A DNA stretch of 48,161 bases from Cyanophora paradoxa CCMP329 (lineage: Eukaryota > Plantae > Glaucophyta): assembly GCA_004431415.1 (NCBI GenBank), contig QPMI01000320.1:1-48161 (forward strand), written 5' to 3'. Shown here piece by piece: positions 8,279 to 45,407 of this stretch. Below the pieces are notes generated by a model. That model was not told the DNA's origin, did not search any database, and saw nothing but the letters and a program-made list of their open reading frames with translations. The position numbers and the translations under genes are program-made. How positions within the stretch are numbered: the stretch's first letter is position 1; the number at the start of each line of letters is the position of its first letter.

Positions 8279-8386
8279 CGGCCGGGTGCGAGGGGCTAGA
8301 CAGGCCGGTAATACTAGCGTTCTAATGCGCCAATCCTATGAAGTATGTATATGCCTTGTGTGTATCGAGTGCGGGGCGCAGGGGGC
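8279..8386 (+). repeat. Left inverted repeat of the element
   Basis: CGGCCGGGTGCGAGGGGCTAGACAGGCCGGTAA... matches the reverse complement of 21768-21875, with 32 of the first 33 bases identical. Confidence 0.85.
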
Positions 8387-9039
8387 GTAAATATGCAAGC
8401 AGGAGTGGTGTATGGCATGCTGTACATCTATTGCAAATGAGCGGGAGCTCGCCAGCAGTGGTCATCCCATATACGTCGCGGCGTCCGCGTGCTGCTCAGC
8501 ACTGGGGCGCTTACGGCGGGTCTAGCGAGCAAGGCGTGCATGCGCGGCGCATATGCGTTCTTTTGCAGCCACAAGCTGGGGCCCGGCGCGGTCCCCGTCA
8601 GCTGCGGGAGCTGGCGAGAACTGATACCCCCCGCCACCCCCCCCCCCTCGGCAAGCCGGCAGCATTCGTCCGGGAGCTCGGTAGGCAGAAGGTGCGCTCA
8701 TGCATCATGCATCGAAGCAGTTTCCAGCCAACCAGCCTCAGCGAGCGACACAGTTGGCTGTTGCGCCGCGAGCGCGCGAGCGCTGTGCGCGAGCGGCGAG
8801 CTCGAGCGCGCGAGCGGAGCCACGTGCTCACAGGTGGCAGTTGCGCCGGGCCACGCGGACGTCGACTGCGGGCAAGCGCGAGCTCGAGGCCCAGTGTGAG
8901 AACCCGCGCGCGACCGGCACCCGCGCAATGCTCCCGCCGATCGCGATATGGCTTCCGTTGCGCGAGCGCGCAACGCGCTTGCAATTGCGCTCCCGGGCGC
9001 CGGCCCGCGCGCTCGCGCGCTGCCCAAATCTCGCGCATC

Positions 9040-11350
9040 GAGGCCCGCCGAGGGCCCTACACGCGCGCGTCGACGGATAGAGATTCTAAATATGGCCTGG
9101 GTCTGACCGCCGCGCGCGCAGGGACCCACCCCCTGCCCCCGCCGCCCCCTGAACGCTGTACCCCTGGTGCGAGCCCCGGGCCGCGCTCCCCGCCAGCCGA
9201 TGGCCCGGCGAGGGCCCTACAAGCGGGCGTCGACGGATAGAGATTCTAAATATGGCCTGGGTCTGACCGCCGCGCGCGCAGGGAACCACCCCCCTCCCCC
9301 CGCCGCCCCCTGAACGCTGTACCCCTGGTGCGAGCCCCGGGCCGCGCTCCCCGCCAGCCGATGGCCCGGCGAGGGCCCTACAAGCGCGCGTCGACGGATA
9401 GCGATTCTAAATATGGCCTGGGTCTGACCGCTGCGCGCGCAGGGACCCCCCCCTGCCCCCGCCGCCCCCTGAACCCGGTACCCCTGGTGCGAGCCCCGGG
9501 CCGCGCTCCCCGCCAGCCGATGGCCCGGCGAGGGCCCTACACGCGCGCGTCGACGGATAGAGATTCTAAATATGGCCTGGGTCTGACCGCCGCGCGCGCA
9601 GGGACCCTCCCCCCCTCCCCCCGCCGACCCCTGAACGCTGTACCCCTGGTGCGAGCCCCGGGCCGCGCTCCCCGCCAGCCGATGGCCCGGCGAGGGCCCT
9701 ACACGCGCGCGTCGACGGATAGCGATTCTAAATATGGCCTGGGTCTGACCGCCGCGCGCGCAGGGACCCTCCCCCTGCCCCCGCCGCCCCCTGAACACTG
9801 TACCCCTGGTGCGAGCCCCGGGCCGCGCTCCCCGCCAGCCGATGGCCCGGCGAGGGCCCTACAAGCGGGCGTCGACGGATAGCGATTCTAAATATGGCCT
9901 GGGTCTGACCGCCGCGCGCGCAGGGACCCTCCCCCCCTGCCCCCGCCGCCCCCTGAACGCTGTACCCCTGGTGCGAGCCCCGGGCCGCGCTCCCCGCCAG
10001 CCGATGGCCCGGCGAGGGCCCTACACGCGGGCGTCGACGGATAAAGATTCTAAATATGGCCTGGGTCTGACCGCCGCGCGCGCAGGGACCCTCCCCCCCT
10101 GCCCCCGCCGCCCCCTGAACCCGGTACCCCTGGTGCGAGCCCCGGGCCGCGCTCCCCGCCAGCCGATGGCCCGGCGAGGGCCCTACACGCGCGCGTCGAC
10201 GGATAGAGATTCTAAATATGGCCTGGGTCTGACCGCCGCGCGCGCAGGGAACCACCCCCTGCCTTCGCCGCCCCCTGAACCCGGTACCCCTGGTGCGAGC
10301 CCCGGGCCGCGCTCCCCGCCAGCCGATGGCCCGGCGAGGGCCCTACAAGCGCGCGTCGACGGATAAAGATTCTAAATATGGCCTGGGTCTGACCGCCGCG
10401 CGCGCAGGGACCCTCCCCCCTGCCCCCGCCGCCCCCTGAACGCTGTACCCCTGGTGCGAGCCCCGGGCCGCGCTCCCCGCCAGCCGATGGCCCGGCGAGG
10501 GCCCTACACGCGCGCGTCGACGGATAGAGATTCTAAATATGGCCTGGGTCTGACCGCCGCGCGCGCAGGGAACCACCCCCTGCCTTCGCCGCCCCCTGAA
10601 CGCTGTACCCCTGGTGCGAGCCCCGGGCCGCGCTCCCCGCCAGCCGATGGCCCGGCGAGGGCCCTACACGCGCGCGTCGACGGATAAAGATTCTAAATAT
10701 GGCCTGGGTCTGACCGCCGCGCGCGCAGGGAACCACCCCCTGCCCCCGCCGCCCCCTGAACGCTGTACCCCTGGTGCGAGCCCCGGGCCGCGCTCCCCGC
10801 CAGCCGATGGCCCGGCGAGGGCCCTACAAGCGCGCGTCGACGGATAAAGATTCTAAATATGGCCTGGGTCTGACCGCCGCGCGCGCAGGGACCCTCCCCC
10901 CCGCCCCCGCCGCCCCCTGAACGCTGTACCCCTGGTGCGAGCCCCGGCCGCGCTCCCCGCCAGCCGATGGCCCGGCGAGGGCCCTACACGCGCGCGTCGA
11001 CGGATAGCGATTCTAAATATGGCCTGGGTCTGACCGCCGCGCGCGCAGGGACCCTCCCCCCTGCCCCGCCGACCCGAACGCTGTACCCCTGGTGCGAGCC
11101 CCGGGCCGCGCTCCCCGCCAGCCGATGGCCCGGCGAGGGCCCTACACGCGCGCGTCGACGGATAGCGATTCTAAATATGGCCTGGGTCTGACCGCCGCGC
11201 GCGCAGGGACCCTCCCCCCCTGCCCCCGCCGACCCCGAACGCTGTACCCCTGGTGCGAGCCCCGGGCCGCGCTCCCCGCCAGCCGATGGCCCGGCGAGGG
11301 CCCTACACGCGCGCGTCGACGGATAGAGATTCTAAATATGGCCTGGGTCT
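9040..11350 (+). repeat. Tandem array A, ~160-bp unit, ~14.5 copies
   Basis: 15 occurrences of ATTCTAAATATGG spaced ~160 bp apart. Units are near-identical apart from a few substitutions and C-tract length. Confidence 0.97.
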
Positions 11351-11363
11351 GGGGGCGCGAGAC

Positions 11364-13468
11364 GGTTGGGGGGCGGCCGGGGGGCAGGGGGCGGGCTCAC
11401 TGCGGCCGGGAATTCGATGTCAGGATTAAAGCGACGGCGACGGCGCGCGGGGCCCGCCGCTAGCGCGCCCGAGGGGCCGAGCCTCGGGGGGGACCCGGCC
11501 GGCAGCGCCCAAGGGGGTACCTGTTTGCGGGGCGGCCGGGGGCAGGGGCGGGCTCACTGCGGCCGGGAATTCGATGTCAGGATTAAAGCGACGGCGACGG
11601 CGCGCGGGGCCCGCCGCTCGCGCGCCCGAGGGGCCGAGCCTCGGGGGGGACCCCGGCCGGCAGCGCCCAAGGGGGGTACCTGGTTGCGGGGCGGCCGGGG
11701 GGCAGGGGGCGGGCTCACTGCGGCCGGGAATTCGATGTCAGGATTAAAGCGACGGCGACGGCGCGCGGGGCCCGCCGCTAGCGCGCCCGAGGGGCCGAGC
11801 CTAGGGGGGGACCCCGGCCGGCAGCGCCCAAGGGGGTACCTGGTTGCGGGGCGGCCGGGGGGCAGGGGGCGGGCTCACTGCGGCCGGGAATTCGATGTCA
11901 GGATTAAAGCGACGGCGACGGCGCGCGGGGCCCGCCGCTAGCGCGCCCGAGGGGCCGAGCCTCGGGGGGGACCCCGGCCGGCAGCGCCCAAGGGGGGTAC
12001 CTGGTTGGGGGGCGGCCGGGGGGCAGGGGGCGGGCTCACTGCGGCCGGGAATTCGATGTCAGGATTAAAGCGACGGCGACGGCGCGCGGGGCCCGCCGCT
12101 AGCGCGCCCGAGGGGCCGAGCCTCGGGGGGGACCCCGGCCGGCAGCGCCCAAGGGGGGTACCTGGTTGGGGGGCGGCCGGGGGGCAGGGGGCGGGCTCAC
12201 TGCGGCCGGGAATTCGATGTCAGGATTAAAGCGACGGCGACGGCGCGCGGGGCCCGCCGCTAGCGCGCCCGAGGGGCCGAGCCTGGGGGGGACCCCGGCC
12301 GGCAGCGCCCAAGGGGGGTACCTGGTTGGGGGGCGGCCGGGGGGCAGGGGGCGGGCTCACTGCGGCCGGGAATTCGATGTCAGGATTAAAGCGACGGCGA
12401 CGGCGCGCGGGGCCCGCCGCTAGCGCGCCCGAGGGGCCGAGCCTCGGGGGGGACCCCGGCCGGCAGCGCCCAAGGGGGGTACCTGGTTGCGGGGCGGCCG
12501 GGGGGCAGGGGGCGGGCTCACTGCGGCCGGGAATTCGATGTCAGGATTAAAGCGACGGCGACGGCGCGCGGGGCCCGCCGCTAGCGCGCCCGAGGGGCCG
12601 AGCCTCGGGGGGACCCCGGCCGGCAGCGCCCAAGGGGGTACCTGGTTGGGGGGCGGCCGGGGGCAGGGGCGGGCTCACTGCGGCCGGGAATTCGATGTCA
12701 GGATTAAAGCGACGGCGACGGCGCGCGGGGCCCGCCGCTAGCGCGCCCGAGGGGCCGAGCCTAGGGGGGACCCCGGCCGGCAGCGCCCAAGGGGGGTACC
12801 TGGTTGCGGGGCGGCCGGGGGGCAGGGGGCGGGCTCACTGCGGCCGGGAATTCGATGTCAGGATTAAAGCGACGGCGACGGCGCGCGGGGCCCGCCGCTA
12901 GCGCGCCCGAGGGGCCGAGCCTAGGGGGGGACCCCGGCCGGCAGCGCCCAAGGGGGGTACCTGGTTGCGGGGCGGCCGGGGGGCAGGGGGCGGGCTCACT
13001 GCGGCCGGGAATTCGATGTCAGGATTAAAGCGACGGCGACGGCGCGCGGGGCCCGCCGCTAGCGCGCCCGAGGGGCCGAGCCTCGGGGGGGACCCCGGCC
13101 GGCAGCGCCCAAGGGGGGTACCTGGTTGGGGGCGGCCGGGGGGCAGGGGGCGGGCTCACTGCGGCCGGGAATTCGATGTCAGGATTAAAGCGACGGCGAC
13201 GGCGCGCGGGGCCCGCCGCTAGCGCGCCCGAGGGGCCGAGCCTAGGGGGGACCCCGGCCGGCAGCGCCCAAGGGGGGTACCTGGTTGCGGGGCGGCCGGG
13301 GGGCAGGGGGCGGGCTCACTGCGGCCGGGAATTCGATGTCAGGATTAAAGCGACGGCGACGGCGCGCGGGGCCCGCCGCTAGCGCGCCCGAGGGGCCGAG
13401 CCTCGGGGGGGACCCCGGCCGGCAGCGCCCAAGGGGGGTACCTGGTTGCGGGGCGGCCGGGGGGCAGG
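11364..13468 (-). repeat. Tandem array B, ~160-bp unit, ~13 copies
   Basis: 13 occurrences of GAATTCGATGTCAGGATTAAAG spaced ~160 bp apart. The reverse complement is related to array A. Confidence 0.97.
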
Positions 13469-14651
13469 GAGAGGGGGGCGGGCCCGCTGAGGATGGGTTT
13501 TTAAGAGAAGGAAGCAAGGAAAGTATGCAATTAGTACCGGCATGCGCTTTTGTTCGCCGGTTGATCGCGTTGCGCCGTGAAAAGGCTCGCTTCTCTGTTC
13601 AGCTGCTGTGTGGCCAATTGGCCACACGCCACAGAGAGCGATTGGATTAGCGCTGAGAGCAAGTTAGGCAGTTTATGTAGCTTCAAAGTAAGGCGACTCA
13701 CAGTGTTAGATGAGCTGCTAAGTGTCCGGCTCTCGGTTGCAAGTTGCAGTTGCAGCTGCGCGATATGCATATGCTGCGCATGCTGTGTGGTCAAATGACC
13801 ACGCGTACGTGCACACGCGAGCGAGAGGGCGGCAAATGCGCGCGTGTAGCTAATATAGATTCCTTATGCTGTATACTTGTTCTAGCTCTATAGTGCGCTT
13901 GCCGCTCCGCGTCCTATAGCTGCTAATCATAACGAGCTCGCGATTTTCAAGCAGAGCTGCTCACGATCACATGCGTGCGGGCGGCCGCACAGCTGCTCAC
14001 GTGCGGTGCTAGCGCTGCGCCTGCAGAGTCCGGCGGTCTGCGGGCGCAGAGTGACGTCGTGCTTGCTTGCTGCAATGCGTACCCCCCTTGCTGGCCGCCT
14101 GTCGACGTCGTCACTCTAAGCGGCGGGCTAACTAGCTGAAACGTTGCTTTTTGGCCTGCGCCTCATGTCGCAGCTGCTTGCGGCGCCCAGAACTGCGTGC
14201 TAGCGCTTGTGCGTGGTTGCAAGGTCGACCATACGGAGCCCAGTTCATAGACGCCGCCTGGCTGCAAAGATATCGGGTCTAGTCGTGTAATGCTCCATGC
14301 TTTTGCACAAACGAAGCCCCTCAGACGCCGCGAACTCCTTTTTTAAAATCATACAGTTCTGGGACATCTGGAAAAGAGGGTTTCCGGCCTGTCATACCCC
14401 TGATAGCCGGGTAACAGGGGTCCTACAGGCCGGAAACTCTTCAGACTGTATGTTCCAGATGTATATAGGTCCAGAAACAGGCTATGGCCGTAGACGAGGC
14501 GCGTTCTGAGCGCGTTTATTTGACCATCTAGATGCGCAAGCACTGCACGCAAAGGCTGGGCGGTCGCTGCGCACCTCATTCGAGCAGTGCGCCAGGCTGT
14601 CATATATGCGGGGGAGGGTACACGCGCACGTGGAGCATCGCGCAGCGCGAG

Positions 14652-15649
14652 ATGACGTCGAACGCGGGCGGGAACGAGAGCGTTAGCGATGGTCTCGTGC
14701 GCGTAAAGGTTGGCGAAGAGATCAGGAGTATCCGCTCGTCGAAACTGAAGGAGCAGCTACCCGACATCGTAGAAGCGGTGCTCCAGATGCAGCTGTGGAT
14801 GCAGACAGCGATCTTCGAAGAAGTCGACGAGCGCGCGAATTCGAGAGAGACATTCTCGCTGAAGCGCATGCCTGATTTCAAGTGGAAGACTGGCACAAAT
14901 GAGAGCCCGAGCAAAATCTACTACGCCATCGTCAGCTGCGGAAGTGCGACGCGTTTTCGATGCTTTTCGATCAATCGCGAACGCAGTCTGAAGCGCGAGC
15001 GCAGAGCCGGAGCAGGGGAGCGCGTCGCAGACAGCTGCTGGCGGGGCGAATGCACATGCCTCGCCGCCGCCTTCAGCTGCGGCCGCGGCCGCTGCAGCTG
15101 GCCATGGGGCATCCGGCGTTACGCCCGAACTTCTGGACATGCTCAAGAACTTGCACACTCCCGCCGGGTCAGGCAAGTTGCACCAAGTGACTGCCGAAAG
15201 CTTAAGCGCTGCTTTAGATCTGATGTGTGCGCACGCCAGGTGGAACTGGCGTGAACTACGGGATGGGGGCGATCCTCAATCGGATCAACGCGTCGAGGGA
15301 CCCGGGCGCCCCGATGACGATGGAGCAGCTGCGGGAGCTGGCGGCCAGCCTAGGTGGCGGTGGGGGGGGCTCGAGCCCGTCCAACACCAACCCCTTCACC
15401 GAGGTGCTGAACGTGTGTGCTACGCCACGCTTGCAGTAACGCGGGCCCCCTCCATCGCAGGCCCCTGCGCGGGGAACTACGGTCCCCCCTGCCCCAATGT
15501 CCCAGAGGGGAGGCACCCAGTCGAAATCAGACAGCTTCGGCAGCGGAGCCCATGTAAGGAACGTCTCGTGGAGTTTCATGAATGCAAATGGTATCGCACG
15601 AATCGATCCACTCTCGATGAAGCTCTCTCCACCTATCCAGGGTGCGTAA
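14652..15649 (+). CDS. Second gene of the element, unknown function (spliced, ~220 aa)
   Basis: MTSNAGG...VRVKVGEEIRSIRSSKLKEQLPDIVEAV...KIYYAI|TAAGGA...LLDMLKNLHTPAGS|GGTGVNYGMGAILNRIN...NPFTE|APARG...GAH|GA*. The introns are phase-compatible and one has a GC donor. Confidence 0.5.
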
Positions 15650-15999
15650 AGTCGAACTCTTGAGCTACTCACTCGAAATTAAACGATCGCAGTTTCGACA
15701 GTAGACAACGAGTCCCTGGTCTACGGGCCGCAATTTACGGGCACGATTGCAAACACGATCGGTATCCTGTTCTCAAGACATCGAGAGACAAGCTCGAAGC
15801 CTCTGCAGCCTGGAGAACCGTCGTACCCAGGTGCAGGACATGCAAGCGAAGATCATGCATCAAGCGATTGCATGTTAATCGAAGCTCCAGATTTCTTGCT
15901 GGAAGGTGGCGTCCTTGCAACTCTAGTTGTCGGCTGGATCGAGCGCAAGAAAATCGACAACAAGCATCATTCGTACGTCGACTTTTTCGAACCGGTGCG

Positions 16000-16160
16000 T
16001 CTCAACGCATAAATGCAATTGTGCAACACATGAGCACCAACGCTTGCGCAACGCTTGCGTTGCAATTGTGTAACACATGAGCGACAACGCTTGCGTAACG
16101 CTTGCGTTGAACTTGCGTAACGCTAGCGTTGACACTTGCGTAACGCTCGCGTAGAACGCG
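16000..16160 (+). repeat. Degenerate 11-bp minisatellite (AACGCTTGCGT-like)
   Basis: Repeated caacgcttgcg/taacgcttgcg units. Confidence 0.75.
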
Positions 16161-16539
16161 ACGCTGCGGGAGCTCCGCCAAATAGCGTTTGAGAATGAGG
16201 TGGGCAAGGGCCAGCAGCAGGTGCGCAATAGCGTTTGAGAATGAGGTGGTCTGCATGGGGATCAAAAATTGCTGCGAAACAGAAAACGATTATCAGGGGA
16301 TCAAAAATTGCTGCTGCTGCTGTGTAATGAACTATTACTCCTTCGGTGTACTTACGTATAGGCTCCCAGTGTTCGCGCCGGGCGGTCCGCACCGTGGCAC
16401 CCTCGAGTGTCGCCTCGGCCCCGCGCTTGGCCGCCTCCGCCGGTCTTGCGAGCTGGCCAGCTCTTGCAAGCGCATCAGCGGCAAACCGAGCGCTCGAATT
16501 GCGAATAACAATTGCGCTCGGCACCCGGCCAGCAGACTA

Positions 16540-18719: not shown

Positions 18720-19150
18720 TGGCACCCTCGTCTTGCTCTGGCCATCCTCCTGGCGCCCAGCGCCCCCGGCTCATCTTATAGAATTTGAATCCCAGTGTAA
18801 TAATTGTTCTTTGGCAGTGCTTCGATTCAGGCTTGGGGCCCGCCCTGGGGTGAATCGAAAGGCCGCGGTTCCGTGGGCTCATCCCCTCAGGTGGCCCCCC
18901 CCGCTACCTTGAGGCGGACCTCGTGCCTCGCACCCGGCGACCCCAGCTCATCTTATAGATTATGGATCCTTGTTTGTAGCATAATGTTTCTCGACGGCCC
19001 GATTCAGGCGTGGGGCCCACCATGGGGTGACAGGCAGCGGTTCCGCAGGCCCAACCCCTCATGTGGCCCCCCTGATTACCTCGAGGCAGACCTCGTGCCT
19101 CGCACCCGGCGCACCCAACTTATCGCATAGATTCTAAATCCCTGTATAAC
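18720..19150. repeat. Degenerate ~175-bp tandem repeat, ~2.5 copies
   Basis: Recurring GCTCATCTTATAGA, CGATTCAGGC.TGGGGCCC, GTGGCCCCCC and CCTCGTGCCTCGCACCCGGCG at ~172-178 bp spacing. Confidence 0.8.
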
Positions 19151-19488
19151 AAATGTAAGCTTCCGCTTCCTTTCATTAAGCATGCGTTGAAACCTCCAAC
19201 CTAGCACACAACGCATCCGCAACGCATGCGTTACGCAATCCCAACGCATGTGTTGCGGATTGCGTAACACAAATGTATGTGCTCTAAGGACCATGGAAGG
19301 ACATCAGCAATGACCTTGGTCTGCGATTAGTATTATCTATGTGCCCAGGCATGTGCCCCACGTGCTGCCCCTGGTGTATATGCGCTTCCATGTCCAGATA
19401 TTTATCTTGTTGAATTCTACTAAGTACACTGCATTTCGAACTAGTGCATTACATCTGGATCTACCGGATCTACCAGAACTAAATTTAC

Positions 19489-21499
19489 TCATACATGAGA
19501 TTCTTCATGAGATGGGAACGATGCGTCGAAAAAAGCATCTCGAGTCGCCCTGGCCATGGATCGGGAATGGAACCAGTCAGAAACCGGATTTATTATACAA
19601 GCTGGAGAGACTGCGGCTATTCTCAATATTTATCGCACCTGAATTGCGGAGCAACAGGATCCCGAAGGCGGGGATCCGAGTCTGTCCCCACAATCTTGGA
19701 TCTCGGGTTCTTTTCGAAATGAAGCTCCAGCATCTCCTCGTACGATGGAAGACGGATAAGCAGAGGCCGAAGGCGGTTAAGACCTGGCCTTTCGAGCCTG
19801 CGAATTCCAAGTTTAGCCGGTTTTAAGCGCACCATAATTATACATATGCATTTCAATTACCATTTGTTGGGACGGCCCCTTTGACCCGTCTCCTTGCTCC
19901 CTGTGTTGACATGCTCGTTCCAGCTGACCCGCTCAAGCTCAAGCCCGAATTCGAGCAGGAAGATGGCCGCTTTCGACATGGAGAAGTACATCAGAGGGTC
20001 GTTCCTGCGCAGTGGCATGTGAGATTCTGAACACTATTTACATTGCAGATAATTTCGCAGCTCGATCCGCACATCCGGTACATGCCCATCTTGAAAAGCA
20101 TCTCTGCAGCTCGAGTGAGGTGCGCTGCAGCGTTCATGTTTGGTTGCCTGTCGTAACGCAATTGTCAGCGCAATTTTGCAACGCAAGTGCAACGCAAGTG
20201 TTACGCAATTGGCAACGCAAGTGCAACGCAAGTGCAACGCAAGTGTTGCTCAAGCGTTGTTGCAAGCGTTGGTCGTTGCGTTGCACAAGCGTTGCAGATT
20301 TCGTAGCGCCGTCTTAGGTTGCATTCTCATATATATATGTAATCTAAATCATTATAATTACCATAGCCATCTTCGTATTTTAAAACGTTTAATTTTCCAA
20401 GCGGGACTGCCGCCACGACCGCACCGCCAGTACCGCTCAGCGACGACGTTTCGGAAGGACTCCCCTTCCCACACGGGCTCCCTGTCGTAGTGTAGGTTGT
20501 ACTGGGCTCGCTGAGCAGAAAGGTCAATGGGCTGAATGATGCCGTGCTCAGCAACCCATGCTGGGTCGGCATTCAGTAGATCGAGAGCTGCATTTGTCTT
20601 CTCAATCACATATGCCTGTGAAAATTCAAGTAAGACTGCAGAAATGTGTGGGGGTGCGACCGTCGGACTGGACATGCGGCGCACGTGCGCGGTACGAAGA
20701 AGCCTGTTCTCGCACCCTGAATCGCAGCTGAGCTGTTCGGGGACCCCGTAATTGCGGAGTGCCGAACTGCAAGTGACCATGGGGCATCAATATTAATTTT
20801 AAGAGCAACAGTACTAGTTTGTAATGGCCATGGGGCGGTGGATGCGCACTAGTAGATCTCAAGCCCCTGCTTTGTAGAACGCGACTGGAAGACTCGAGTG
20901 GCCATGACGATGGAGGACGAGTTGTCGATGGCGTTCTCAATCCACACGCCCAGCCACGTCAGCATCTTCTCATTCTGTGCGAGCGCGTTCGCGCGACGTC
21001 AGTTCATGCTTCACATTCCGCGCGCACCGCGCCCACAGACGCTTGCCTGGTCGATTCCCATGCTCCATCCGACGTAGGGACCGAAGTAGGGGGCGCGCGG
21101 AATCACCCGCCGGCTCCGCTTGCCGAACTGCAGGAGGCGCTGGTCGCGCCCTTTTGGATCGACCTTCGCTAGAGCTTTTTTGATGCGCTTTTGTCCAGCA
21201 AAAAGCTTCCCGTGATTCGCTGCCCGCAGCGTCCCATACACAGATTTGCCGCAGTTGCCGCCGCGAAGCTCCGAGGCTGCGCGCACGTGCTTCTCCAATT
21301 CGGATTTCGAAACCCAATGCCAAGTTGACAAGCCTAACTGCCGCAGGTAGGAACGCAGTGTCGTCCGAGACAGCTTAATGGGCTGCTCCGGATCCGTTCG
21401 CAAAGCTATCAGCATCGCTGGAACGCGAAGCTTCTGAACATTTACGAGCTCGCGAAGTCGAGAAGCTAAATGCTCGTCCAGCCCGCTGGGGCGCACCAT
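19489..21499 (-). CDS. DDE (integrase-core, IS3/IS481-related, IS3EU-like) transposase, at least 8 exons
   Basis: Spliced product: HTH-like LSRTTLRSYLRQLGL, QKRIKKALAKVDPKG, PYFGPYVGWSMGIDQ|NEKM..GVWIENAIDNSS, YGVPEQLSCDSGCEN, GESFRNVVAERYWR, SWNEH, GRPNKW. Putative triad: D(GIDQ), D(CDSG), E(AERYW). The 3' end is approximate. Confidence 0.88.
20150..20295 (-). repeat. 11-bp minisatellite (GCAACGCAAGT) inside a transposase intron
   Basis: Repeated gcaacgcaagt units. The reverse complement resembles the 16000-16160 repeat. Confidence 0.8.
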
Positions 21500-21767
21500 G
21501 CTCTCGCAGCTAGAAGAGTGGGGGGTACGTACCGAACTGACGCGCACTCGTCCTGCTTCGCGCCTGCACTGGCATGCACTACGATGCGTATAGACCTTGC
21601 GCCGTCCCTGGGGCCGCACAGAATCGACGTGCGCCACCCCTGCGTGCAGTGCCGCCCGCCCCATGCTAGCTACATCTATATGCTGAACGCGACTTGCACG
21701 GCCGCGTCCCTGAGCGTGCGCTGCGGCCATTTCACATGCACTAGACCACATTCATCGCTTCTGAGGT

Positions 21768-21875
21768 GCCCCCGTCGCCCCGCTATGCGCAGACACAAGG
21801 CACATGCATATCATATACTTCTGGCGCTATAGAACTCTCTAGTTACCGGCCTGTCTACCCCCTCGCACCCGGCCG
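21768..21875 (-). repeat. Right inverted repeat of the element
   Basis: The reverse complement aligns without gaps to 8279-8386. It lies ~270 bp upstream of the transposase ATG. Confidence 0.85.
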
Positions 21876-38949: not shown

Positions 38950-40950
38950 CCATGTGATTTTGACGAAAGCTGAAGGATCAGTACCGGAAGGCCCCAGGCA
39001 CAATCGGCAGTGCACCTGCCAGAAAAAGGGTAGTGGTGGCGAAAACACCTAACGGTCTATTCTACCTTGCATGCCCCGGCGGTCCGGTGCTCATACACAC
39101 AGACATGGAAAGCAACCACAGACATCCGAATGCAGGCCTCTTCCTAATGCCGGCCTGAGGGAGTCCTGGTCCCGAACTTCGGAATCTCATGTGTGAAACC
39201 ATCAGCTGTCAGCCATGTCATCAGCCTCATCGTAAGTAATGAACGGAACAAGGACACTGACACACGTTGGAGGGGACCGGAACAGGGACAATGAACGCTT
39301 TTTGAAATGAATTCGCACACACCGAGACAAATGGCTAGAGATATAACTGAGGTGTCCATCTGTGTCAAGTCGAGAGATGAACCTACGGGACTAAGCCTTA
39401 CGGACATCGGACCGGGTGGAGCTCGGATATGGAAATAACTGGAGACGCTATCCCGGGGACTAAGTCTAGAGCTGCAGCACAGGAAAGATCCTACGCGGGA
39501 AAGGGAGTGACTACCCAGGGACGAGAATAGAAATCAGAGGTGGGCAGCAAAGTGAACTGCAGCTGTAGCTATCGCTATGCCTAGTAAGCTAGGGCCTCCG
39601 AGAAGGCGCACTATAATCTAAACCACTCTGTACACGCTAGAGTACGGCCCGCCGTGTCGTCGGCACGGCGGGTCGGGTCGGGGGCTCGCTCGTCCGAGAA
39701 CAAGCCTGGTGGAGCCGCCGGGCTCAGAGCATTCGGGGAAGATTGGTCGGGGGAAAGGGGGACGGGGGCAGGGAGGGGGGCGCGGCATGGAGCGACGTTG
39801 GGCGGTGGGAAGGGACGGGGGAGGACCGGGTCGGGCAGCCGCGGTCGGGAGGAGGGAGGCTCCAGTGGCGCGTTCCGCCGGGCTTCCAGCCGCCCGCCGA
39901 CCGCCTCCCCCCCGCCGCGGGCAATGACGAGCCCCCTCCGCGGCGGTCCGGCCGCCCCGGCCTGGCGCGTGGCCGGGGCAGGCGCCGGTGGGTTCAGCGG
40001 CCGACCGACGACCTTCCACCTGGCAGCCCGCACCACCGTCCCCTCCCTGGGGTAGCGGGAGATCAGCAGAGCAGAAGGGGCGGAGGGGGTGGGGGATGGG
40101 GCCGTGGGGGAGGGCGACTGGGGCAACGGGCGAGAGAGGGCAGGGCGGGAGAGAGCAGCGGTGGCGGCGGGGGGCGAGCGTGTCGGCGGTAGGGAGGGGG
40201 GTGTGGAGGCGCAGGTCGCGCAGGCGACGGCGGGCCCTGCTGGAGGGGAAGGACCTCTTAAGTTCTGAGCAGGAAAGTGCAGGTTTGCGCACGGTTTAGC
40301 CCTGCTCGTGTGGAGTCTGCAGCTGATAGGAAATCGGTGCTTGGGGGAGGTCGAGCCTTAGCGTTTGAAAAGAGAAGAGGGGCCTGCAAAGTCAGAACAG
40401 GTCAGATCTGCCAGAGCGCCTTGAAGCGCGGGAGCCCGACTGCACCTTCGTGTTCTTTTCCAGAACGCTTCAGGCCAAGCTCTAGCTCTTTAAAATAGAA
40501 GTTAAGGCCCATTCTGGCTCGATTGCATCAGCTCGCGGTGGCCGAGGCAGCGACGAGCAGAGATTAGCTGCTCAGGCGCAAAGCACGGTGCTGCGGGTCG
40601 CCGAGTCGAGGGAAGTGAGAAGGTGGCGTGCGTCAAAGCCAGAAAGTCGATGCAATCGAGCCTGGTGCAGCAGGAGACTGATCGTCGTGCTAGAGCGCCG
40701 GCAGTGCGGTTCGGTGGGATGTACGAAGTGGACCTGGATGCTCGCCGGCGATTCCTTAGCTAGAGCACTCGCAATTCCTTAGAAACTTAGAGCACTTTGC
40801 GGAAATGCCGAGCTCACCCGGCGAAGCGCGCGGCATCGGCACGTCGGACGCTTTCGGCCACACATGTACTGGGATAGAACCTGCGCTTTACAGGCCAGGC
40901 AAGCGACTCCCGCAGCGTGTCTGAGTCTAAGCGCACGCTCTCGAGCTCGA
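38950..40950 (-). mobile_element. Degenerate non-LTR retrotransposon (ORF1 end plus APE endonuclease relic)
   Basis: Across stops and frameshifts: CAFSEA.L, LDTDGHLSYI...IHF.SVHCP and QGRIDR.VFS, in the order of L1/Tx1-type APE motifs. Several related copies lie nearby. Confidence 0.55.
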
Positions 40951-42098: not shown

Positions 42099-42990
42099 AT
42101 GGCTAGAGATAAAATGGCTAGAGATATAACTGAGACAAATGGCTAGAGATATAACTGAGGTGTCCATCTGTGTCAAGTCGAGAGATAAACCTACGGGACT
42201 AAGCCTTTCGGATATCGGACCGGGCGGAGCTCGGATGTGGAAGTAGATGGAGAGGCTACCCCGGGAGCTAGTTCTAGAGCTGCAGCACAAGAAAGATCCT
42301 ACGCGGGGAGGGGAGTGACTACCCAAGGACGAAGAGGAGGAGCATGAGTGGACGGCACAGTAAGAGCTGCAGCTGAAGCTATGCCTAGTTAGCTAAGGCC
42401 TCCGGGAAGGCGTACTATGATCTAAACCACCCTATACACGCTAAGGTACGGCCCGCCGTGTCGCCGGCACGGCGGGCGCGGGCCGGGGGCTCGCTCATCC
42501 AGGAGCGGGCCTGATGGAGCCGCCGGGCTCTGGGCATCGGGGAGAGGACGGTCGAGGGGGAGGGGGAGGGGCTGGGGGAGCGGCATGGGAAGGAGTGAGG
42601 CAGTGAGAAGAGGCAGGGGGGGACCGGGTCGGGTGGCCGCGGCCGGGAGGGGGGGAGGGTCCAGTGGCGCGTTCCGCCGGGCTTCCAGCCGCCCGCCGAC
42701 CGCCTCCCCCCCGCCGTGGGCAATGACGAGCCCCCTCCGCGGCGGTCCGGCCGCCCCGGCCTGGCGCGTGGCCGGGGCTGGTGCAGATGGGTTCAGCGGC
42801 CGACAGACGACCTTCCGCCTGGCAGTCCGCAGCACCGTCCCCTCCCTGGTGTAGCGGGGGATCAGCAGAACGGCAGAGGCGAAGGGAGCGGGGGGGTTGG
42901 CCGGAGAGGGGCGACTGGGGTGACGGAGGGGAGGGGGCCGGGTTTGGCGGGGGCGGCGGCGGCGGCGTGAAGCGAGCGTGTCGGCGGTAG
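42099..42990 (-). mobile_element. Second copy of the LINE relic
   Basis: Colinear and highly similar to ~39325-40190. Confidence 0.75.
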
Positions 42991-44040: not shown

Positions 44041-44636
44041 GCGGGTCTTGGTGGCCATGGTGGAGTCTCCTCGTCTCCTCCAGGTGTAGCCCCCCCCCCC
44101 CCCCCCCCCTCCCCTACGCCGTGACGCCGTGACGGGGGTTAGTTATCCGGGAGGGGTAGGCTCCAGGGGCGGACCTTAAGCTTGGTGGTGTCGTAGATCT
44201 CTTGTGCTCGTAGTGCTGCCTTCCATCCACTGTACTCCGGCGGGCAGTCGGCGTTCTGGGCTGCGCGCAGTTCGTTATGGAGGTGCAGGGGCCCGTCGCA
44301 GGCGGGACAGAGCTCTATCGGGCGCGGGGTCCGCGGGCGCGTTCTTTAGCCCTAGCTCCTGTGCGGGGCGGGCGCGGGCGACGTTTAGAGGCTTGGGAGA
44401 TGCGACAGTCCCGTTCCCAGGCTGCAGTGATCTCGCATCGGCTGGTCCACAACCGGCGCGCGCGTTCGATCAGCATCTGACGTACGCGTTTAGCCGTGCG
44501 GGGCGCGCGGCGCGGATCGAGGTCAAGCCGTCGAACCAGGTCGCTTTCGAGCGACGTATACGTAGGAGCGATGCCGGCGCCCTGGAGTACCCAGAGTCGC
44601 GGGAAGACGGTCGGGTCGTCGTCGAGGCTGCGCGCT

Positions 44637-45407
44637 TCCGGGCGGCCCGGTCTCCTCCCAAGCGCCCGCCGCCAAGAGCGCACCCGAGGGCGCGGGGCCG
44701 GCGTCCTCCAACACCGGTACAGGCGCTCTTCTGCAGCTGTGCCCTGTCGCGCGCGCGCCTGCTCCTGCGTGCTGAGGGCGCGTGGCGCTGGCGCAGGCGT
44801 GCGGGGGAGCGGGCCGGCGCCGGCTCCGGGACGGGAGGCCGGCGGGGTGCACGAGAGGGCGGAGTGGGCGGAGGAGGCGCTCGAGGAGGGGTTTGAGGAG
44901 GAGGAGGCGGGGCGCGGGGAGGAGCCCTTTGAGCGCGACTGGGGCGGGGCGGGGGCGGAGGGGGCGGAGGGGTGGGCCCTCGGGGCCGCCGGGGAGGCGC
45001 CCCGCGAGCCCGCCTTCCCTGTTCTTGCAGCCGGCCCGGGGCCCTCCCCCTGGCCCCTTTCCCCAGCCCCGCCCTCCCCCCGCCCCCCCGCCCGCCCCGG
45101 CCCCGCCCGGAGCTTCAGCGCCCACGCGGGGGCCTCCTGGAGGCCGGCGCCGGGCCGAGGGCCCCGGGGAGCGGGCGGCGGGCCCGAGTGGCCCCCGCTG
45201 GAGTCCCCGCGCCGCGGCCACTCCGCCCCGAAGCTCTCCCCGCAGCGCTTCCTCCGCTCATCATGACCCGCCCCCTCGCTTAAGCTTCTTCCCGCGCACC
45301 CGAGCCCACCCCGACTCTAATCTAGACCTAGAATCACCTGAACCTGTGCATGTGTGCGACTCATGATCAGAACCCGGGACCAATCATTGAATTGCAACAT
45401 ATGCGTC
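44637..45407 (+). pseudogene. Direct duplicate of the 3' part and downstream flank of the 33952-35797 gene, with an internal deletion
   Basis: Near-identical to 34646-34874 joined to 35401-35938. Confidence 0.92.

What the first reader, a model, noticed from the sequence alone, without database searches (positions are those of the whole stretch)
9040..13468. Two abutting 160-bp arrays are diverged homologues in opposite orientation
Seen: array A (~14.5 units) switches within ~15 bp to array B (~13 units), both with a ~160-bp period. A's GCAGGGACCCTCCCCCCTGCCCCCGCCGCCCCCTGAACCCGGTACCCCTGGTGCG aligns to the reverse complement of B, GCAGTGAGCCCGCCCCCTGCCCCCCGGCCGCCCCGCAACCAGGTACCCCCTTGGGCG. Each unit has one AT-rich island at an equivalent position, and strand skew flips from C-rich to G-rich at 11350. 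Each array is internally homogeneous. Inference: unit length and core were kept while the arrays homogenised separately. This suggests a mirror-symmetric nucleosome-phasing or protein-loading platform (centromere-, origin- or enhancer-like) carried by a transposon.
Basis: partly seen in the sequence, partly recalled or inferred. Interest (0 to 1): 0.85.

Follow-up and report, generated by a model that had tools for sequence, protein, structure and literature searches.

The report
Inverted satellite pair inside algal transposon
In the alga Cyanophora paradoxa, two facing blocks of 160-base repeats inside a large jumping gene descend from one repeat; they touch here most likely because this copy lost the DNA that lies between them in its sister copies, so this is an unusual version of a known transposon habit and not evidence of a new centromere- or origin-like element.

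Summary
Confirmed: array A (9042-11351, 14.4 x 160 bp) and array B (11364-13469, 13.2 x 160 bp) are each homogeneous (95.5% and 97.4%). A aligns collinearly to reverse-complemented B (55-60% identity; core 41/55), beating all whole-unit shuffles. Both lie inside a 13.6-kb IS3EU/GingerRoot-like DNA transposon of Cyanophora paradoxa (contig tig00001343), 1.1 kb upstream of a VPS13-like gene.

The 'mirror platform' reading is not supported. The junction is about 50 bp out of register. The two nearest AT islands are 89 bp apart and asymmetric, their sequences are not conserved, and the equal unit length is not statistically remarkable. Short-read contigs show that sister copies (roughly 3-4) carry A, then unique DNA, then B. 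Abutment is therefore particular to this copy: a deletion with a 12-base filler or, less likely, a misassembly. The junction itself could not be verified.

Best reading: foldback-like inverted arms built from one ancestral satellite, each homogenised separately. One contig shows an A/B hybrid unit, suggesting occasional exchange. No function is shown. The scan noted the same layout on other DNA of this genome (s1-549536, s1-515325).

The parts
8279..8284 (.). CGGCCG, candidate 6-bp target-site duplication (left); palindromic, so the exact end of the element is ambiguous
8285..8395 (+). left terminal inverted repeat, about 110 bp, about 76% identical to the right one; the core shared with a related element begins with TG at 8287
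9040..11351 (+). array A: 14.4 units of 160 bp, C-rich on +, one AT island per unit, G-quadruplex-type motif on the minus strand in most units
11352..11363 (.). 12-nt filler joining A (ends at phase 21) to B (starts at A-equivalent phase 71); likely deletion scar, not verified by reads
11364..13469 (-). array B: 13.2 units of 160 bp, G-rich on +, inverted homologue of A; all 13 units share a variant (G at the 11409 site) almost absent from short-read contigs
14652..16235 (+). second gene of the element = published model tig00001343_g8328.t1 (376 aa); no Pfam family, no atlas hit, no usable fold
18749..19145 (+). decayed 177-bp tandem (2.2 copies, 75%); not detectably related to A or B
19641..21496 (-). 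spliced DDE transposase gene, IS3EU/GingerRoot-like; catalytic D, D and E motifs lie in separate exons; the first intron has a GC donor (read from the sequence)
21760..21869 (-). right terminal inverted repeat
21870..21875 (.). CGGCCG, candidate target-site duplication (right)

Best explanation
A and B are the two arms of an old internal inverted duplication in a small family of large IS3EU/GingerRoot-like DNA transposons of Cyanophora paradoxa. Step 1 (inferred): a 160-bp tandem array already existed and was duplicated in inverted orientation around a unique core, giving a foldback-like A-core-B module. The arrays start at different unit phases yet share period and collinear content, which points to an array, not a single-copy segment, as the ancestor. 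Step 2 (pattern shown, mechanism inferred): unequal exchange or slippage among head-to-tail units homogenises each arm, while exchange between the inverted, now 55-60% identical arms is rare, so they drift apart as blocks. Step 3 (shown by contigs): sister copies keep unique DNA between A and B. Step 4 (inferred): this copy lost the core through a deletion with breakpoints inside both arrays and a 12-nt filler, which makes the arrays abut out of register. The arrays are most likely passive, CpG-methylated satellite cargo. A nucleosome-sized unit is the usual size of satellites and needs no special function.
For: Homology and separate homogenisation. Transposon frame: about 110-bp inverted ends; a related end 370 bp from a 79% identical transposase in an independent contig; exon matches to Cyanophora Clr5 + rva_4 proteins. 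Sister copies: a contig joint from A (11278) to B (11387) with unknown sequence between, in two runs, at 3.3-4.0 times the depth of apparent single-locus contigs; other inner ends of A run into at least 255 unique, more AT-rich letters absent from the window; outer edges match this element's flanks with small differences. The window's majority A variant at 11308 (10/15 units) makes up only 13-15% of contig depth, which fits this array being one of about 4-5. All 13 B units share a variant that is under 1% in contigs, consistent with locus-level homogenisation. One contig carries an inverted A-like 96-bp piece (about 90% to A, where B is only 70%) running nearly in register into B, as expected from rare exchange between the arms. 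Precedent: foldback elements with tandem-repeat arms (PMC4079207); most satellites have nucleosomal or very short units (PMC8122249); C. paradoxa repeats are CpG-methylated (PMC12344493).
Against: The core of the sister copies was not obtained, only its first letters and the existence of the joint. Contig depth is not a copy number (tool's caveat). The junction was not seen in any run. The hybrid contig appears in one run only, and its reciprocal was not listed. Neither the array flanks nor the terminal repeats resemble the units, so the origin of the unit is unknown. The arrays show no CpG loss (o/e about 1.0) and mostly transversions, which is not what long-term methylation-driven decay predicts, though host DNA has the same ratio. 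The B variant's absence from contigs could also come from graph simplification.
Confidence: 0.7

Rival explanations
1. The A-core-B module is functional for the element. The arms position phased nucleosomes, or present repeated binding sites for an element-encoded protein (transposase or the 376-aa second gene), around an AT-rich core, as VANDAL repeats do for VANC anti-silencing proteins or Galileo internal repeats do for transposase. This copy would be a damaged derivative.
For: Same period in both arms. One AT island holding most ApT sites per unit. A G-quadruplex-type motif in the best-conserved part of both units. Layout kept in several copies. Other elements of this genome reportedly show the same design (s1-515325, s1-549536; unchecked). 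Precedents: PMC5735166, PMC4079207; linker 6mA at ApT in AMT1-encoding eukaryotes (PMC12695648).
Against: AT-island sequence is not conserved (z 1.2). G4-type motifs are common in host DNA here (2.6-3.3 per kb versus 4.3-6.1 in the arrays). Length conservation is not significant. Units do not resemble the terminal repeats. Gene 2 has no recognisable domain. No clear 160-bp periodicity in the window's host DNA.
Confidence: 0.15
2. The abutment is an assembly artefact: the long-read assembly joined A to B across a missing core, so no real chromosome has this junction. The homology of A and B stands either way.
For: No listed contig of four short-read runs spans 11352-11363, and in one run the depth arithmetic leaves nothing over 11360-11363. 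Sister copies have a core.
Against: Logan contigs are simplified by Minia3 with SPAdes-type heuristics (bioRxiv 10.1101/2024.07.30.605881). From my own knowledge, these remove short low-depth links between high-depth nodes, which is what a 72-bp single-copy junction is; the tool also filters records. The assembly used about 75x PacBio reads from about 15-kb inserts (PMC6704402), longer than both arrays together (4.4 kb). The 12-nt filler and the locus-specific B variant are easier to explain as real.
Confidence: 0.12
3. A-core-B is a separate, older foldback-type transposon nested in the IS3EU-like element, its arms being decayed terminal repeats.
For: Same layout as foldback elements (PMC4079207): tandem-repeat arms facing a middle domain.
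Against: No inverted similarity between the DNA left of A and right of B. The outer ends of A and B fall at different unit phases (119 versus 41). No duplication seen at the outer edges by inspection.
Confidence: 0.1
4. A and B are unrelated repeats whose likeness comes from G/C-run-rich composition.
For: The strongest similarity is in low-complexity C/G runs; the non-core half is only z 1.9-2.5.
Against: Whole-unit scores exceed all dinucleotide and block shuffles and all 1078 real control stretches. Identical period, near-ungapped collinearity (88/161), and an in-register hybrid unit in a contig.
Confidence: 0.03

Closest known systems
Foldback-type DNA transposons (FB, Galileo, Tetris; PMC4079207)
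   Same: Two inverted arms made of tandem repeats around a middle domain, variable between copies, and a source of satellite-like arrays.
   Different: Here the arms are internal (750 bp and 8.4 kb from the ends), only 55-60% identical to each other, unrelated in sequence to the terminal repeats, and the carrier is IS3EU-like, not Mutator- or P-like.
IS3EU/GingerRoot superfamily (PMC10045372, PMC6839031)
   Same: Integrase-like DDE transposase (relatives carry Clr5-like HTH and rva_4), 100-150-bp terminal inverted repeats, size near the reported upper range (12.9 kb), extra gene content, a GC-rich 6-bp duplication candidate.
   Different: Ends are TG..CA without a direct duplication, or GG..CC with a 6-bp one, not TA..TA. 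Kilobase inverted satellite arrays were not mentioned in the passages I read.
VANDAL/VANC tandem-repeat targets in Arabidopsis (PMC5735166)
   Same: Non-coding tandem repeats inside a multi-gene DNA transposon, whose units change together between copies, in a host that methylates transposons.
   Different: No short motif shown to be bound, no VANC-like protein detected, no inverted pair of arrays described for VANDAL in the passages read.
Inverted-repeat regional centromeres (Candida tropicalis, fission-yeast type; PMC4741521, PMC7292649, abstracts only)
   Same: Inverted repeats flanking a central core, as in the sister copies.
   Different: Those arms are homogenised with each other, whereas these have diverged. 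This copy lacks the core and sits in a mobile element next to a host gene. No CENH3 data.

Membership tests
IS3EU/GingerRoot DNA transposon | Integrase-like DDE transposase of this lineage | tested here: met
   Exons match full-length Cyanophora proteins that pass the Pfam rva_4 cut-off and carry a weak Clr5 hit; D, D and E motifs align. The window's own exons give only weak Pfam hits. No tree was built.
IS3EU/GingerRoot DNA transposon | Terminal inverted repeats of about 100-150 bp | tested here: met
   About 110 bp, 76% identical
IS3EU/GingerRoot DNA transposon | TA..TA (occasionally TG..CA) termini with a 6-bp target duplication | tested here: inconclusive
   TG..CA ends have no adjacent duplication; GG..CC ends have a 6-bp palindromic one; a related end favours TG
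IS3EU/GingerRoot DNA transposon | Dispersed copies in the genome | tested here: inconclusive
   Variant edges and joints in contigs indicate several copies, but their positions and flanks were not obtained
Foldback element | Long inverted arms made of tandem repeats around a middle domain | tested here: met
   Inverted homologous arrays; middle domain present in sister copies, absent here
Foldback element | Arms are terminal, nearly identical and flanked by a target duplication | tested here: not met
   Arms are internal and 55-60% identical, outer ends at different phases, flanks not inverted-similar
VANDAL/VANC-type anti-silencing target array | Element-encoded protein binds a motif in the repeats and removes methylation | not testable with these tools
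   Gene 2 has no recognisable family or fold
Inverted-repeat regional centromere | CENH3-bound central core between homogenised inverted arms, one per chromosome | not testable with these tools
   No CENH3 data for glaucophytes found in the paper search
Inverted-repeat regional centromere | Core present and arms homogenised with each other | tested here: not met
   No core in this copy; arms 55-60% identical
Nucleosome-phasing satellite | One positioned nucleosome per unit, with unit length equal to the host repeat length | not testable with these tools
   Host DNA of the window gave no clear 160-bp autocorrelation peak; MNase data needed

The most novel reading that the evidence does not exclude
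Several unrelated large transposons of Cyanophora have evolved a functional module, two inverted nucleosome-phasing satellite arms around an AT-rich core, that creates a protected chromatin domain (anti-silencing, replication-start or kinetochore-like), with occasional arm-to-arm recombination flipping the core. This window would hold a core-deleted derivative of it.
Probability: 0.1. Interest if true: 0.75.

Novelty: new variant of a known kind. Interest (0 to 1): 0.3.

Why it matters
It is a clean natural example of concerted evolution with a barrier: two arrays from one ancestor, a few kilobases apart in the same mobile element, each 95-97% uniform but only 55-60% alike, with a hint of rare exchange between them. 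With the sister copies in hand one could measure how orientation and divergence stop homogenisation. Public nanopore 5mC/6mA data for C. paradoxa (PMC12695648, PMC12344493) allow a direct test of unit-locked chromatin. If the arms turned out to be functional, it would be a new cis-module of giant eukaryotic transposons; nothing here shows that.

Tried and rejected
Rfam and tRNA scans: nothing. Exact searches for an A motif in metagenome and prokaryote contigs, and for a B motif in viral contigs: nothing. Units versus terminal repeats, versus the 177-bp repeat, and left versus right array flank: no significant similarity (best case TIR-left versus B, 5/200 shuffles among eight comparisons). Cruciform or hairpin at the junction: a 334-nt strand folds no better than shuffles (z +1.0). 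Higher-order structure or gradient within A: distance between units does not depend on lag. CpG-decay signature: absent. Nucleosome-scale periodicity in host DNA of the window: no clear peak at 160. Length conservation as evidence of selection: not significant. Gene 2: no Pfam, atlas or fold signal, mean pLDDT 36. DNA of sister copies could not be fetched, because EukProt proteins have no contigs on record. The laminin/EGF protein P0003 was rejected as a low-complexity false hit. Absence of the junction from short-read contigs was rejected as proof of misassembly (see rival 2).

Full report
Observation. Units within A are on average 95.5% identical and within B 97.4%. A 12-nt stretch, found only once in the window, separates them. 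The A consensus aligns collinearly around its whole circle to the reverse complement of B. The local score is 52 against 26.5 +/- 4.2 for dinucleotide shuffles (0/500) and the global score 112 against 81.7 +/- 4.9 (0/150). Block shuffles that keep G/C runs never reach these values, and the forward orientation scores at or below background. Real DNA from the rest of this very GC-rich window scores at most 45, against 63 for the A/B pair under the same scoring. Identity is 55% with two one-base gaps, or 60% with lenient gaps. The signal is strongest in the C-run core (41/55, z 4.8), weaker in the second half (z 2.5) and absent in the AT island (z 1.2). Homology in opposite orientation is therefore well supported; conservation of the AT island is positional only.

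Source and setting. A published Cyanophora paradoxa gene model, tig00001343_g8328.t1, matches the window at 14652-16235 essentially exactly. The window is thus from the Canu/PacBio assembly of Price et al. 2019 (PMC6704402; about 75x long reads, probably haploid). The arrays sit inside a 13.6-kb segment bounded by about 110-bp inverted repeats. It encodes on the minus strand a spliced DDE transposase. Its exons, searched one at a time by reference, match full-length Cyanophora proteins carrying a Clr5-like helix-turn-helix and an rva_4 integrase core, with the D, D and E motifs in place. An independent contig has a 79% identical first exon about 370 bp from a similar end, the same layout as here. 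The ends are ambiguous: TG..CA with no adjacent duplication, or GG..CC with a 6-bp palindromic duplication. These features fit the IS3EU/GingerRoot group (PMC10045372, PMC6839031) except for the terminal dinucleotides. The element is inserted about 1.1 kb upstream of a VPS13-like host gene.

The junction is not a mirror centre. A ends at unit phase 21 and B begins at the A-equivalent phase 71. The two nearest AT islands are 26 and 63 bp from the junction and 89 bp apart, too close for a nucleosome if they are linkers. The strand across the junction folds no better than its shuffles. The skew flip follows directly from inversion. Equal unit length is weak evidence of constraint, because few indels separate the units (P 0.06-0.5).

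Sister copies have a spacer. Both units are very deep in all runs. In two runs a contig goes from A (to 11278) through unknown sequence into B (from 11387), at 3.3-4.0 times the depth of contigs that look single-locus. Inner ends of A continue into at least 255 unique letters that are not in the window. Outer ends match this element's flanks with small differences. The window's commonest A variant at 11308 is 10 of 15 units here but 13-15% of contig depth, which fits one array among about 4-5. These depth figures are rough, since the tool warns that depth is not copy number. An unchecked note of this scan describes two homologous 160-bp satellites inverted around a unique AT-rich core on another contig (s1-549536). 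It agrees with what I had inferred and may be such a sister copy; I could not fetch that DNA. One contig holds an inverted A-like piece (about 90% to A, where B matches A at only 70%) followed after 20 letters by B, within about 10 bp of homologous register. That suggests a rare exchange between the arms or an edge unit that escaped homogenisation; it was seen in one run only.

Is this junction real? No listed contig spans it, and in one run nothing covers 11360-11363. This is not decisive. Logan contigs are simplified with SPAdes-type heuristics, which from my own knowledge remove short low-depth links between high-depth nodes, and the tool filters records. Reads longer than both arrays, a novel filler, and a variant shared by all 13 B units but under 1% in contigs favour a real, locally homogenised deletion copy. 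I put misassembly at about 0.12.

Mechanism. Shown: homology, inversion, separate homogenisation, transposon context, and spacer-bearing relatives. Inferred: an existing 160-bp array was duplicated in inverted orientation around a core (the arrays' own boundaries fall at different phases, 119 to about 108 for A and 41 to 49 for B, yet the content is collinear across both). Head-to-tail exchange then kept each arm uniform while the arms diverged, and this copy lost the core. The arrays are probably passive cargo under CpG methylation, as reported for C. paradoxa repeats (PMC12344493), although they show no CpG depletion. A role in nucleosome phasing or protein binding remains possible: one AT/ApT island per unit, a G-quadruplex-type motif in the conserved core, and VANDAL and Galileo precedents (PMC5735166, PMC4079207). 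But G4-type motifs are common in host DNA, the units do not resemble the terminal repeats, and gene 2 gave no functional clue.

Comparison and verdict. It works like a foldback element's tandem-repeat arms around a middle domain, but fails membership because the arms are internal and diverged. It sits in an IS3EU/GingerRoot-like carrier. It resembles inverted-repeat centromeres only in the layout of the sister copies. My literature searches found no description of diverged inverted satellite arms in this superfamily, so it is a new variant of a known kind. The scan has noted the same design in other DNA of this genome (s1-515325, s1-509586, s1-549536). Interest 0.3; the functional-module reading has probability about 0.1.

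Noticed in passing
window:7646-7870: Two 115-bp copies (88% alike) just left of the element, each with hairpin-forming palindromes and a tRNA T-loop/B-box-like motif on the minus strand; possibly a small SINE- or MITE-like repeat. ARAGORN and Rfam found nothing.
   Followed up: partly
window:16014-16157, 19211-19254, 20152-20263: Short 11- to 47-bp repeats of one motif family occur just after gene 2, near 19.2 kb, and inverted inside a transposase intron (77-82% complementary between 16.0 and 20.2 kb).
   Followed up: no
window:17089-17349: Compact 86-aa ORF inside the element, after a GC-rich intron-like stretch; may be a captured host gene piece. No Pfam hit.
   Followed up: partly
window:34642-35938 and 44633-45407: Two stretches (241 and 554 bp) duplicated at 98-99% identity about 10 kb apart, bracketing an AT-richer region; possible long direct repeats or a recent segmental duplication.
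   Followed up: no
window:37006-37246, 39059-39442, 39321-40192, 42129-42990: Nested repeats: an inverted pair (about 84%) and an 870-bp direct pair (84%) that share a motif; looks like layered remains of other mobile elements.
   Followed up: no
window:6347-7188 (minus strand): First exons of a VPS13/bridge-like lipid-transfer gene; the transposon sits about 1.1 kb upstream of its start.
   Followed up: partly
L001:255-645: End of a related element (same terminal core, 79% identical transposase exon, same GC-donor intron) from another sequencing sample; shows that the family has diverged relatives.
   Followed up: partly
proteins P0002, P0004-P0009: A second, about 35% identical IS3EU-like transposase family with near-identical gene models on about seven Cyanophora contigs, i.e. 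probably recently active.
   Followed up: no
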